In this document: positions 19,951 through 23,400 of the stretch, one piece after another | Layout of the letters: every line of letters begins with the position of its first letter | How positions within the stretch are numbered: position 1 is the first letter of the stretch | NCBI GenBank assembly: GCA_051530055.1 | Contig: CM121341.1 | Span: 806,001-870,000 of the forward strand | DNA from: Neoechinorhynchus agilis | Taxonomy: Eukaryota > Animalia > Acanthocephala | Length of the DNA: 64,000 nt | Reading direction: 5' to 3' | Notes under the pieces: generated by a model | What the model was told of the DNA's origin: nothing | Database searches by the model: none | What the model saw: only the letters and a program-made list of their open reading frames with translations | Program-made: the position numbers and the translations under genes

Positions 19951-20249
19951 CAACCAACGCGCAATAATTCTCAGACCCCAATGTTTTATGGTAGAATAAA
20001 GTCACTTTTAATCAATGTGCGAATGTCATTTTCAAGTTTTTTCAGTCTTTTGCAGCGAATTTACATTATATTCTGCGGCCAATTAGAAGCTAGCATAACA
20101 TTTTCAGTTGAAAAGTTACAACTTTCAGCTTTTTTTTTGATCGTAGACTGTTGCCTAGGTGAAAGATTCGTGCAAAATCGAACATAAATTTTGAAAATGA
20201 AACAAACCCAAAGCTCAATTGCTCATATCATTCTTGAATACAGAGCAAG

Positions 20250-20856
20250 ATGCAAGAAAGTAAGTCTAAATCACATATTTACGACCGATATACTTTATTT
20301 CCTTTTAGAAATTGTAAAAATGAACCAATTTGGCAGAGTTTACGTCCAAAGCGAACCGCTGAAGGATTCTCTTCGTCTTCGGATAATTGTGATGGCCAAT
20401 CAAGGAATGAAGCAAAACGAAATAGCCACACAGACCCGTGTTTCATACGGCACAATTTCCCGAATTTTGAAAAGGTAGCGCGAGTTTTTCTAACAAAACA
20501 TAAAAATTTAAATTCATTTTAGAATCAATGGCGTTGAAACAATAAAGAAACAAAAAGTCTCTAGAATACAGTACAATAAAGATCAACTTTTCGTACTGGA
20601 ATCTTCTTTTTACATGAATCAAAGGCCGAGTAAATCAATAATGGAAGGCATCGCCGATTCGTTAGAGCTCTCAGTTCAAAAAATAAAGGTAAGAAAACGA
20701 AATATTCACTATTTTTATTTTTAACGGTGCGACATAAAGAAAAACTTCTAATTTTCGTGTACGCTTACAACTTTTCATTTTTAGACTTGGTTTACTAATC
20801 GTCGTCAAAAGGAATGTAGATTAATGATTGGCCGATCATCCTTTCTTGACTTCTAA
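20250..20856 (+). CDS. Pax-like transcription factor, 137 aa: PAI subdomain directly followed by a PRD-class homeodomain
   Basis: Exons 20250-20259, 20309-20474, 20523-20688, 20785-20856, all GT-AG. Protein MQEKIVKMNQFGRVYVQSEPLKDSLRLRIIVMANQGMKQNEIATQTRVSYGTISRILKR-INGVETIKKQKVSRIQYNKDQLFVLESSFYMNQRPSKSIMEGIADSLELSVQKIK-TWFTNRRQKECRLMIGRSSFLDF*. Confidence 0.85.
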
Positions 20857-21399
20857 ATTTGGAAATAAAAAACTTTAACTCATTGTAGAGCGCTTAATAT
20901 AGAAATTAAAAATATCGTTATAATTAAAGATTTTTTAGTAGTAAAAAGCATTAAAAATTGTGCGGTTGTCATTTTTTTCATAATTTTGAACAATAAAATT
21001 TAAATCAGATAGAACAACTCGATGAATAATGTTTTTTCGTTTTCAATAAATCAATGATGATCAATCGCTGTACTTTTAAACAATCGACTTTAGTGGAACC
21101 ATTTAATTAACTGTAACTTATCGCAAGATAAGGAGATTTAAATTTTCGTCAACATCGAACGCCGTTTTTTGAATGTGGGCCCGAATTATTCGTGGCTGTT
21201 TGTGTCCTAAATAGAAACATTAAACAAACATCGCTGTTTTAAGACTCAATGATGATGTCTAAAAGTATTTCAGAAATGTCGAGGAAAACATTGATAAATA
21301 TATGCTATCGGCTCATAGACTCATAAACCCTTAAACATCGAGAATTTTGCATAAAGACACAAAAACGCAATTTAAATATTCGCGGACTAATATTTGATC

Positions 21400-23400
21400 G
21401 CGTTCAGCATATTTTCGAGGATCAGCATCGGAGTTGTTTGTTCACAAAACTCCAATGTATCCCAGGGAATTAAAGACTGAGGTTAGTATTGTTGTAAAGT
21501 AAAGGTTTGAATTTTAGAACTTGATATTGCTAAAGAAAGACGTCGATTGCCAATTCAAAAAGGTCGATTTTTTCTTACACATTTTCGAAATTGATGCAAA
21601 ATCAATAAATTTATGTCGTCCGATAAATATTATGAATGACCCTATTTGATTTCGAACTTTTTGAGGCCCATTTGTACGATCGAAACATTTCTACAGTTCT
21701 CAATTCTAAATCTTTTAAGGACAATGAAATAACTTTTAATTACATAAAATATATCATGATTAATAAAGACAGTGTTGGTGAAAGTAGTGATCCATACGGA
21801 ACTCCATATTTGGAGTATAAAGTTGTGAAAAAGGATCAACACCTCGTTATAAAAGGATTTTTATTCCACAAAGATTTAATCTCGCAAAACATATTAAGAA
21901 ACAATTTAAAATGAAATAAAACATTACATAAAAATTACTTGTCTTAAGAATTAAATGCTTTGCTTAGATCCACTTGAATTAATAATATATTAACATTCAT
22001 TCTATCATTCATGGAATGGAGCTCCGCTAACAGAGAATGCACTCTACGGCGACAACCAAATCCGTGAAAATATTGTGGAATGTGGTTGCGATATTCTAAT
22101 AAATTTGTCATTTTTGAATTCATCACTTGTTTAACGCACGAGATGATTGGTTTTCGTGTGGCTATTTTACTCACATGACTAAGTTACGATATTGAGCTCT
22201 TAAGCAAAGGAATAAAAACCTTTTTAACTGTATTGATTTTTTGATAGATCATCATTATACTATTCAGTACGATAAAATTTATGAAAAAGATCTTTAAACA
22301 GGAAATGCTTATTGAAGGAATTTTTCGGACAAACAGAAATGCATTTAAAAGCAATATAGTTGCTGTGATTGAATGCCAAACTAAAATCATCCATACTCAA
22401 ATTCCAAGTAAATGATTTCGATTTTAGCATAGGTTGGGAAGTGGAAATGTATTTACTGAACGCGTGGCACAGCAAGATAATGTCTGTAACATTTGGACAG
22501 ATACTTTTTCAAATCCAGCCAACCGCTTTACTGTTCCAAATAGTCGGTCGCCTATTCAACAATGTTCCCCAATATCCTTATATAAAACTTTTTGTTTAGA
22601 TAAGAAAGTTCGATCTTGTCCAATTTGGAAATAGAATTCGGAGGCATAAAATCTTTTCATTAGGTTATCACGCAAAGTAATGTCACCGTCTGGGTTGGAA
22701 ATCATGGACTTTTTGTATAGAAGATTCTCCTTTTTACATGCAGGAAATCTTTTTGTAAAAGAAGTAGTTAAAAGATTGCGTTTGGCAGAAATTAAAGTTT
22801 AAGCATTAAAATTAGAAAGATCAATTACCTTCAAAGAAGAGATGGCAAAATTGATATTTTGGTTTAATTTATTTATCCGAAAAGAAAATGCTCTTAAGAA
22901 TCGCCCGTCGATAAAAGAGCCCGTGAATAATTGTAAAAGAAGGGAAACTAAGGCACACGAAAAACATGATCCATAAATTGTAGTCTGAGTCGTAAGAAAT
23001 TCCTTAGGTGTGAGTATATGCTCCAAATAATGAAATTTGGATTCAGTCAATTTGGTAGAGGATTTTATGAGCTATAAACGGATAAAATTTGTACGGGGAA
23101 AATGTCTGTTGTTATCCTTAAAGCGAAAAGGAGTTAAATACTAATATTTATAGTCCAACGGGAAACCTATGGTAGAATTAGCTAGTAGATTGGATGGACG
23201 GACATTGAAGCTAGTTTATGTTGATCAGTTTATTATTGGAGTGGATCCAATCTTTTAGAAAAATAAAAAATCATTAGATAGGTCTACTGTATTTTTTAAA
23301 TGTATAATAGTAGACAAAATGCTCCATAAACATTATACGCCAAGAAGCTAAAATTTAATCAAGAAAGATCCTTATATGTTCATTTCAAGGTTTGTTGCGC
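21400..23400 (-). mobile_element. Heavily decayed LINE ORF2 (APE and RT)
   Basis: HGFGCRRRVHSLL...LIQVDLSKAFNS, KYGVPYGSLLSPTL, LSDDINL. Related fragments at about 34140-34270 and 35950-36100. Confidence 0.7.

What the first reader, a model, noticed from the sequence alone, without database searches (positions are those of the whole stretch)
20250..20856. Minimal Pax-like factor: PAI subdomain joined to a homeodomain with Thr50, RED subdomain missing
Seen: a cleanly spliced 137-aa protein whose exon 2 is a PAI subdomain (NQFGRVYVQSEPL...RVSYGTISRIL, compare NQLGGVFVNGRPL...RVSHGCVSKIL). Exon 2 ends in a phase-2 intron at the Arg where I recall Pax genes having a conserved intron. About ten residues later the homeodomain starts; it has the PRD-class intron between residues 46 and 47 and reads WFTNRR. 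Established: Pax homeodomains have Ser50; eyegone-type Pax proteins keep RED and lose PAI; nematode npax genes have PAI without a homeodomain. Inference: exon-level loss of RED, octapeptide and linker produced an unusual PAI+HD architecture with possibly altered DNA specificity.
Basis: partly seen in the sequence, partly recalled or inferred. Interest (0 to 1): 0.7.

Follow-up and report, generated by a model that had tools for sequence, protein, structure and literature searches.

The report
Mini-Pax gene that skips its homeodomain exon
A thorny-headed worm (Neoechinorhynchus agilis) has a small, expressed Pax-type regulator gene that joins half a paired domain directly to a homeodomain. The messenger RNAs seen in adult worms leave out the exon for the DNA-reading helix of that homeodomain.

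Summary
Exon 2 is a true Pax PAI subdomain, exons 3 and 4 encode a divergent homeodomain with Thr50, and there is no RED subdomain.

The genome is Neoechinorhynchus agilis (Acanthocephala). The locus is transcribed. RNA contigs from four worms of one study confirm junctions 1-2 and 2-3. The reading frame then stops after two codons. The main product is therefore about 116 aa: PAI plus homeodomain residues 1-46, without the WFTNRR helix.

This scan found the family before on other DNA:
- a broken tandem array on contig 2;
- a Gly50 family at 6.5 Mb on contig 1;
- a Ser50 gene at 17.2 Mb.

The window gene is the only intact Thr50 copy. It appears unannotated. Its lineage shows purifying selection (13 synonymous to 10 non-synonymous changes). 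The Thr50 and Gly50 genes share introns and a 9-residue spacer, so the RED-less layout is older than this gene.

No relative outside N. agilis stood out. RED-less Pax gene models do exist in Nematostella and in a chiton. I class it as a new variant of a known kind, of moderate interest.

The parts
19966..21033 (+). Duplication unit shared with the broken paralogs: four copies on contig 2 at 12.29-12.30 Mb and one on contig 1 at 17.907 Mb.
   Evidence: blastn identity is 74-78% over exactly this span and not beyond it.
20209..20259 (+). Exon 1: 5' UTR (at least from 20209) and the start codon ATG at 20250.
   Evidence: The X3 contig holds 51 letters before the joint 20259>20309. An X4 loose end reads GCAAGAAA just before 20309.
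20309..20474 (+). Exon 2, 166 nt: the PAI subdomain of the paired domain. It ends in a phase-2 intron after ILK-R.
   Evidence: Pfam PAX positions 4-54 of 125, 42.7 bits. Pax5 matches at 7e-9. The exon borders equal those of other Pax genes in this genome. RNA joints lie on both sides.
20523..20688 (+). Exon 3, 166 nt: a 9-residue spacer plus homeodomain residues 1-46 (helices 1 and 2 and the start of helix 3).
   Evidence: Pfam Homeodomain positions 3-45, 31.4 bits. The joint 20474>20523 is present in all four runs.
20785..20856 (+). It is intact in DNA but is not seen spliced to exon 3.
   Evidence: Translation; Pfam Homeodomain positions 46-55. No joint 20688>20785 was found. The only cover is one unspliced contig, 20692-20902, at depth 3 in X1, against 267 for exons 2-3.
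20864..20869 (+).
   Evidence: Read from the sequence. The X1 low-depth contig ends at 20902.
21244..21663 (+). The terminal exon actually used. The frame reads ACT CAA TGA, with the stop at 21250-21252. The rest is 3' UTR, with AATAAA at 21604-21609 and an optional intron at 21482-21535.
   Evidence: The joint 20688>21244 (GT..AG, skipping 555 nt) is present in X1, X3 and X4 on the same contigs as exons 2-3, with no mismatch in X1.

Best explanation
This is a real, transcribed gene of Neoechinorhynchus agilis. It is the only intact copy of the Thr50 branch of a RED-less 'mini-Pax' family seen so far only in this worm.

**Shown.**
- Its DNA encodes a PAI subdomain, a 9-residue spacer and a full but very divergent homeodomain.
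- In adult worms exon 3 is spliced to a distal last exon at 21244. The frame closes two codons later.
- The main protein is therefore about 116 aa: the PAI helix-turn-helix plus homeodomain helices 1 and 2. It lacks W48, F49, Thr50, N51 and R53.

**Inferred.**
- Any DNA binding by this product would go through PAI helix 3 alone. The residues at paired-domain positions 42, 44 and 47 are Gln, Arg and Tyr. The beta-turn has changed from NGRP to QSEP, which probably weakens or alters binding.
- The half homeodomain would serve, if anything, as a protein-contact surface, as is held for the partial homeodomain of Pax2/5/8.
- Choosing between the proximal last exon (full homeodomain) and the distal one (half homeodomain) could work as an on/off switch for the homeodomain. 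Only the 'off' form has been seen.
For: **Organism.**
- G000 has 102 contigs and 46.2 Mb, and contig 2 is 16,375,937 bases long. That matches the published N. agilis assembly (PMC12690905).
- Proteins of the paralogs carry that species name in NCBI.

**Domains.**

**RNA.**
- The joint 20259>20309 is present in X3.
- The joint 20474>20523 is present in four runs.
- The joint 20688>21244 is present in three runs, on contigs identical to the locus.
- Depth in the distal exon follows exons 2-3 across runs: about 267, 26 and 33, and about nil in X2.

**Family.**
- All five Thr50 paralogs are broken.
- The Gly50 genes share both intron positions and the 9-residue spacer.
- The Gly50 protein is annotated as a spliced PAI plus full homeodomain protein, KAL7675226.1.
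- The Thr50 and Gly50 PAI subdomains are sisters with 95/89 support.
- The PAI exon is 166 nt with the same borders in the window gene, the Ser50 gene and a canonical Pax gene.

**Selection.** The window branch has 13 synonymous and 10 non-synonymous changes. Omega is about 0.22, with P between 0.0003 and 0.002.
Against: **Limits of the RNA evidence.**
- It consists of assembled contigs from four worms of one study. These are probably adults from fish gut, going by the published study; the runs are coded, so this is assumed.
- Contigs drop rare variants, so a minor or stage-specific isoform that includes exon 4 cannot be excluded.

**Signs that exon 4 may still be used.**
- Exon 4 keeps an open frame and the key homeodomain residues.
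- It has a good acceptor and its own AATAAA signal.
- The same junction is used in a transcript of broken copy C (X4 record 21).

**Limits of the selection test.**
- It relies on parsimony with a decayed outgroup and few sites.
- The window and contig 2 branches do not differ significantly (Fisher P = 0.14).

DNA binding and any role of the half homeodomain are untested.
Confidence: 0.68

Rival explanations
1. The functional product is the 137-aa PAI plus full Thr50 homeodomain protein, made in cells or stages not sampled (embryos, acanthor or cystacanth larvae) or as a minor isoform. The distal-exon mRNA would then be a regulatory or unproductive form.
For: - Exon 4 is intact with W48, F49, N51 and R53.
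- The unit copied to the paralogs ends at 21033, so it covers exon 4 and its 3' end but not the distal exon.
- An X1 contig, 20692-20902, stops shortly after the AATAAA signal.
- Copy C's transcript and the Gly50 mRNA both use the 46/47 junction.
- Exon 4 shows 2 synonymous changes to 1 non-synonymous on the window branch.
Against: - No contig in four runs carries the junction.
- Exon 4 has zero depth in X3 and X4, where exons 2-3 stand at 26-33.
- In X1 its depth is about 1% of exons 2-3, and that contig is unspliced at the acceptor.
Confidence: 0.22
2. The gene is a transcribed gene in decay. Like its five paralogs it has lost its role. The exon skipping and the altered DNA-contact residues would be early steps of that decay.
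For: - All other Thr50 copies are broken, and at least two of them still give RNA or gene models.
- The beta-turn NGRP has become QSEP, and His47 has become Tyr.
- The recognition helix is skipped.
- No annotated protein was found for the locus.
Against: - The frame is open through all four exons.
- There is an excess of synonymous changes on this branch (omega about 0.22).
- Depth is high in one worm (about 267).
- All splice sites are intact.
Confidence: 0.1
3. The helix-turn-helix comes from a Tc1/mariner transposase and sits next to a homeobox by chance.
For: - Paired domains and Tc1 transposase N-termini are related (PMC4901127).
- The unit occurs in several copies on two contigs.
Against: - Pfam PAX is the best family. 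Transposase HTH models score far lower.
- The PDB hits below E = 0.1 are all Pax proteins.
- The exon borders are those of Pax genes.
- There are no terminal inverted repeats and no sign of a transposase catalytic part in the 1.07-kb unit.
Confidence: 0.01

Closest known systems
Pax / PRD-class genes (Pax3/7 and Pax2/5/8 type PAI)
   Same: - The PAI subdomain is recognisable at E = 7e-9 to Pax5.
- It has Gln42 and Arg44, as in Pax5 and Prd.
- The PAI exon is 166 nt with a phase-2 intron after ILxR, as in canonical Pax genes of the same genome.
- The homeodomain has its intron at 46/47.
   Different: - There is no RED subdomain, no recognisable linker and no octapeptide.
- The homeodomain has Thr50 instead of Ser50 and is very divergent; its best PDB match has E = 0.03.
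- The beta-turn reads QSEP instead of NGRP.
- The protein is only 116-137 aa long.
N. agilis Gly50 mini-Pax family (KAL7675226.1, contig 1 at 6.47-6.52 Mb)
   Same: - The exon plan is the same, and so is the 9-residue spacer between ILKR and the homeodomain.
- Both share derived PAI residues (GR in place of GG, YV, IA..TRVS).
- They are sisters in the PAI tree.
   Different: - Identity is 45% in the PAI subdomain and 26% in the homeodomain.
- The Gly50 gene has Gly50, a long C-terminal tail and no separate first mini-exon.
- Its annotated mRNA includes the recognition-helix exon.
Vertebrate Pax2/5/8 partial homeodomain
   Same: A Pax protein that keeps only the first part of the homeodomain and lacks the recognition helix (PMC4901127). 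The main isoform here ends after residue 46.
   Different: - In Pax2/5/8 the loss is fixed in the gene; here it comes from the choice of last exon.
- Pax2/5/8 keeps RED and the octapeptide.
Nematode NPAX proteins (PAI only)
   Same: They have a PAI subdomain without RED (PMC4901127). Like the main isoform here, they have no working homeodomain.
   Different: - NPAX genes have no homeobox at all, and some carry an eh1 motif.
- They belong to a different phylum, and no orthology is shown.
RED-less Pax gene models in Nematostella (XP_048583500.1) and the chiton Liolophura (XP_064611778.1)
   Same: A PAI subdomain (Pfam PAX 1-67 and 1-78 of 125) is followed by a homeodomain with no RED.
   Different: - Those models keep a canonical PAI, the linker start and a Ser50 homeodomain, and have 40-100 residues between the domains.
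- They are predicted models that I did not check against RNA.
- They do not group with the Thr50/Gly50 clade.

Membership tests
Pax / PRD class | PAI subdomain of the paired domain | tested here: met
   Pfam PAX positions 4-54 of 125, 42.7 bits against a cut-off of 22. Pax5, Prd, Pax8 and Pax6 match at 7e-9 to 4e-6.
Pax / PRD class | RED subdomain (a complete paired domain of about 128 aa) | tested here: not met
   The PAX match stops at profile position 54-60. Only 9 residues lie between ILKR and the homeodomain, and intron 2 is only 48 nt long.
Pax / PRD class | PRD-type homeodomain, mostly with Ser50 | tested here: not met
   A homeodomain is encoded, but residue 50 is Thr. The exon that carries it is absent from the mRNAs seen.
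Pax / PRD class | Pax intron positions around the PAI exon | tested here: met
   The acceptor lies 14 nt before the Asn codon and a phase-2 donor follows ILxR. These borders are the same in the window gene, the Ser50 gene and canonical gene L011. The donor is also shared by L012, L013 and L015.
Pax / PRD class | Octapeptide / eh1 motif (present in some families only) | tested here: not met
   No FxIxxIL-like motif occurs in the exon translations.
N. agilis RED-less mini-Pax (Thr50/Gly50 clade) | PAI exon, phase-2 intron, 9-residue spacer, and a homeodomain split at 46/47 | tested here: met
   Gene structures are, the PAI tree (95/89), and the profile search top hits.
Tc1/mariner transposase | Transposase HTH pair with a DDE catalytic domain and terminal inverted repeats | tested here: not met
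   Transposase HTH models score far below PAX. The PDB hits below E = 0.1 include no transposase. There are no convincing inverted repeats at the unit ends.
Nematode NPAX | PAI-only protein with no homeobox in the gene | tested here: not met
   Homeobox exons are present in the gene. Orthology to the nematode genes was not tested.

The most novel reading that the evidence does not exclude
Acanthocephalans evolved a compact two-part DNA-binding module: a PAI subdomain tied to a homeodomain by a 9-residue spacer, arranged rather like a POU domain. In the Thr50 gene the homeodomain half would be switched on or off by the choice of last exon. One locus would then give either a PAI-only factor or a PAI plus homeodomain factor with an unusual Thr50 specificity.
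Probability: 0.2. Interest if true: 0.6.

Novelty: new variant of a known kind. Interest (0 to 1): 0.45.

Why it matters
**Why the layout is of interest.**
- Reviews of Pax 'domain tinkering' list the loss of PAI, of the homeodomain, of half the homeodomain and of the whole paired domain. They also list PAI-only proteins. The review I read (PMC4901127) does not list PAI joined to a homeodomain without RED.
- A small family with that layout sits in a parasite whose gene set is strongly reduced. That adds a new combination.
- It also offers a natural test of what a PAI subdomain can do without RED.

**Why the RNA result matters for this gene.** Any study of DNA specificity should therefore start from the 116-aa form, or from the Gly50 paralogs, which do include the helix.

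Tried and rejected
**Searches that found nothing.**
- A word search with the open frame around exon 2, covering candidate proteins of 53-166 aa, found nothing.
- The same search with the contig 2 paralog protein, covering 123-392 aa, found only the query itself. The window gene therefore seems unannotated.
- An exact look-up of a neighbouring LRR open frame, meant to reveal the local annotation, found no record.
- The N. agilis paper and its one held supplement never mention Pax or homeobox genes.
- Rfam gave no match in 19-23 kb of the window.

**Leads rejected.**
- The long X1 contig (1571 nt) seemed to extend the transcript beyond 21621. Its loose end maps 9.8 Mb away, and the link is an exact 31-nt repeat, so the contig is chimeric.
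- The 92-aa open frame at 21636-21914 looked like a possible second cistron. It belongs to a dispersed repeat with at least 24 mostly broken copies and has no Pfam match.
- The Ditylenchus hit P0094 looked RED-less by phmmer but keeps a diverged RED.

All searches were made exon by exon, by reference.
- For that reason I did not fold the 116-aa or 137-aa protein.
- The exons were concatenated only inside local scripts, to classify codon changes. One search also printed the joined translation.

Full report
**What is in the sequence.**
Every intron is GT..AG, and the total is 137 codons.
- Exon 2 matches Pfam PAX over profile positions 4-54 of 125 at 42.7 bits, against a cut-off of 22.
- Exon 3 matches Homeodomain positions 3-45, and exon 4 matches positions 46-55.
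- Against solved structures, every PAI hit below E = 0.1 is a Pax protein: Pax5 at 7e-9, then Prd, Pax8 and Pax6. No transposase appears.
- The homeodomain is very divergent. Its best matches are ceh-37, HMBOX1 and HESX1 at E = 0.03-0.07.
- It keeps R5, L16, F20, W48, F49, N51 and R53, and has Thr at position 50.
- Nine residues separate ILKR from homeodomain position 1. There is no room for a RED subdomain.

**Whose genome this is.**
G000 has 46,219,100 bases in 102 contigs, and contig 2 is 16,375,937 bases long. The published assembly of the acanthocephalan Neoechinorhynchus agilis has 102 contigs, 46.2 Mbp and an N50 of 16.4 Mbp (PMC12690905). Proteins of the paralogs are filed at NCBI under that species, on contigs of exactly these lengths. 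That paper sequenced poly-A RNA of 74 single worms. It never mentions Pax or homeobox genes.

**What the RNA shows.**
Four coded runs from one study hold the locus as contigs with GT..AG joints, so they are cDNA.
- Joint 20259>20309 is in X3. That contig also holds 51 letters of exon 1, reaching back to 20209. An X4 loose end carries the last eight letters of exon 1.
- Joint 20474>20523 is in all four runs.
- No contig joins 20688 to 20785.
- In X1, X3 and X4 the contig that carries exons 2-3 jumps from 20688 to 21244, skipping 555 nt. The skipped stretch starts with GT and ends with AG. The contig then runs on to 21481-21663.
- The frame then reads ACT CAA TGA. The product ends ...QKIK-TQ, about 116 aa, after homeodomain residue 46.
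- Depth in the distal exon follows that of exons 2-3 across runs: about 267, 26 and 33, and about nil in X2, where exons 2-3 stand at 2. It therefore belongs to the same transcription unit.
In X1 it is covered by one unspliced contig, 20692-20902, at depth 3. That contig ends soon after the AATAAA at 20864-20869.
- An optional intron, 21482-21535, lies in the 3' UTR (X3).
- The apparent continuation of the X1 contig beyond 21621 is a chimera. It arises through an exact 31-nt repeat shared with contig 1 at 10.62 Mb.

Contigs show presence, not absence. A rare or stage-specific isoform that includes exon 4 remains possible.

**The family in this genome.**
Searching the genome exon by exon gives three groups.
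1. *Thr50 branch.* It comprises the window gene, four tandem copies on contig 2 (12.294-12.303 Mb) and one copy on contig 1 (17.907 Mb).
   - Every other copy is broken: lost ATG, a 5-nt or 22-nt deletion in the PAI exon, stop codons, W48 turned into a stop, or deleted exon parts.
   - Two of them are nevertheless annotated as 'hypothetical proteins' (KAL7672664.1 and KAL7672663.1).
   - An X4 contig shows copy C spliced exactly at the 46/47 junction.
2. *Gly50 family.* It has four copies on contig 1 at 6.47-6.52 Mb. The annotated protein KAL7675226.1 (193 aa) is a spliced PAI plus complete homeodomain protein.
3. *Ser50 gene.* It lies on contig 1 at 17.18 Mb. It keeps the start of the PAI-RED linker (RYKKTGQVHPG) and then goes straight into a homeodomain.

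All three groups share the phase-2 intron after ILxR and the 46/47 intron. The Thr50 and Gly50 genes also share the 9-residue spacer and derived PAI residues, and they are sisters in a PAI tree (95/89 support, on long branches).

The PAI exon is 166 nt in the window gene, the Ser50 gene and the canonical gene L011, with an acceptor 14 nt before the Asn codon and a phase-2 donor. The same donor is present in canonical genes L012, L013 and L015, which do have RED. The canonical homeodomain-bearing Pax genes of this genome lack the 46/47 intron.

So the PAI exon is a true Pax exon. The RED-less layout is older than the window gene. It arose at least partly by deletion inside coding sequence rather than by dropping a whole exon.

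**Is the gene maintained?**
I polarised substitutions with the contig 1 17.9 Mb copy as outgroup.
- The window branch has 13 synonymous and 10 non-synonymous changes. Omega is about 0.22, and P is 0.0003-0.002 against neutrality.
- The ancestral branch of the contig 2 array has 7 synonymous and 14 non-synonymous changes.
- Exon 3 alone shows 5 to 3, and exon 4 shows 2 to 1, which is too few to judge.
- The two branches do not differ significantly (P = 0.14), and the outgroup is decayed. This is moderate evidence, not proof.

**Relatives elsewhere.**
I searched a profile of the Thr50 and Gly50 PAI exons against 1.84 billion representative proteins. It gave 1754 hits at E up to 0.001.
- Above the plateau of single-domain Pax hits (about 55-60 bits), the listed hits that I inspected were N. 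agilis proteins, Pax gene models holding two PAI copies, or multi-HTH repeat proteins whose scores add up over several weak stretches. P0017 (914 aa, six stretches) also lies above the plateau and was not inspected.
- No ortholog from another species stands out.
- The window gene's own product was not found among proteins of 53-392 aa, so it appears to be unannotated.
- Among the 150 best hits, two other predicted proteins have PAI and a homeodomain without RED: Nematostella XP_048583500.1 and the chiton Liolophura XP_064611778.1. Both have canonical PAI and Ser50 homeodomains, and I did not check them against RNA.
- The review of Buerglin and Affolter lists the known Pax domain combinations. 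PAI plus homeodomain without RED is not among them.

**How it most likely works.**
*Shown:* the main mRNA encodes PAI plus the first two homeodomain helices.
*Inferred:* the product cannot bind DNA through its homeodomain, so any binding rests on PAI helix 3.
- The residues at paired-domain positions 42, 44 and 47 are Gln, Arg and Tyr (alignment). From my own knowledge, these positions set Pax class specificity.
- The beta-turn NGRP reads QSEP. This includes Ser at the position of the mouse undulated Gly15Ser change, which from memory weakens binding.
- A low-affinity or altered-specificity PAI factor is therefore likely.
- The half homeodomain may act as a contact surface, as is held for Pax2/5/8.
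- The proximal last exon (full homeodomain) and the distal one (half homeodomain) could form a switch, but only one state has been observed.

**Rivals.**
- The 137-aa form is the real product in unsampled stages (0.22).
- The gene is transcribed but decaying (0.10).
- The helix-turn-helix comes from a transposase. This is refuted.

**Earlier notes of this scan.**
The family was found before on other DNA: the contig 2 array (whose note already names this window's copy as the intact relative), the Gly50 cluster and the Ser50 gene.
- I re-derived the broken state of the array, the structures of the Gly50 and Ser50 genes, and the species name.
- I did not test the claim that bdelloid rotifers share the layout.

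Searches were made exon by exon, by reference, so the spliced proteins were not folded. Exons were concatenated only inside local scripts for codon classification, and one search also printed the joined translation.

Noticed in passing
window 21636-21914: This 92-aa open frame just beyond the distal exon belongs to a dispersed repeat with at least 24 copies in the genome. Most copies carry stop codons, and there is no Pfam match.
   Followed up: partly
window 21591-21621: This exact 31-nt stretch is shared with contig 1 at 10,619,568-10,619,598. It makes the assembled RNA contigs of three runs chimeric at 21621.
   Followed up: yes
window 21101-21402: The sequence around the distal acceptor has two homologs (69-79% identity). 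One lies 2.7 kb past the contig 2 mini-Pax array (12,306,069) and one on contig 1 at 17.804 Mb. The acceptor AG reads AA in the contig 2 copy.
   Followed up: partly
L002 (contig 2, 12,302,834-12,304,292): Broken copy D is annotated as hypothetical protein KAL7672664.1. Its PAI exon, read from an upstream ATG through the unspliced first intron, is spliced at the usual ILKR donor to unrelated downstream exons.
   Followed up: partly
window 20191-20478: The frame stays open from an upstream ATG (20197) through intron 1 into the PAI exon, both here and in the contig 2 copies. A transcript that retained the intron would give an N-terminally extended PAI protein. The contigs seen here start at 20209 and splice intron 1 out.
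   Followed up: partly
P0151 / P0012 (Nematostella) and P0145 (Liolophura): These RefSeq Pax models have a PAI subdomain, the linker start and a Ser50 homeodomain, but no RED subdomain.
   Followed up: partly
P0005, P0007, P0008, P0011, P0015: These proteins of 350-740 aa hold six to ten tandem generic helix-turn-helix repeats. They scored high in the PAI profile search only by summing weak matches.
   Followed up: partly
L039 (contig 1, 6,298,055-6,299,640): The Pax6-type gene (Gln44, Asn47) has no intron after ILTR and none at homeodomain position 46/47. Instead it has an intron near homeodomain residue 19/20.
   Followed up: no
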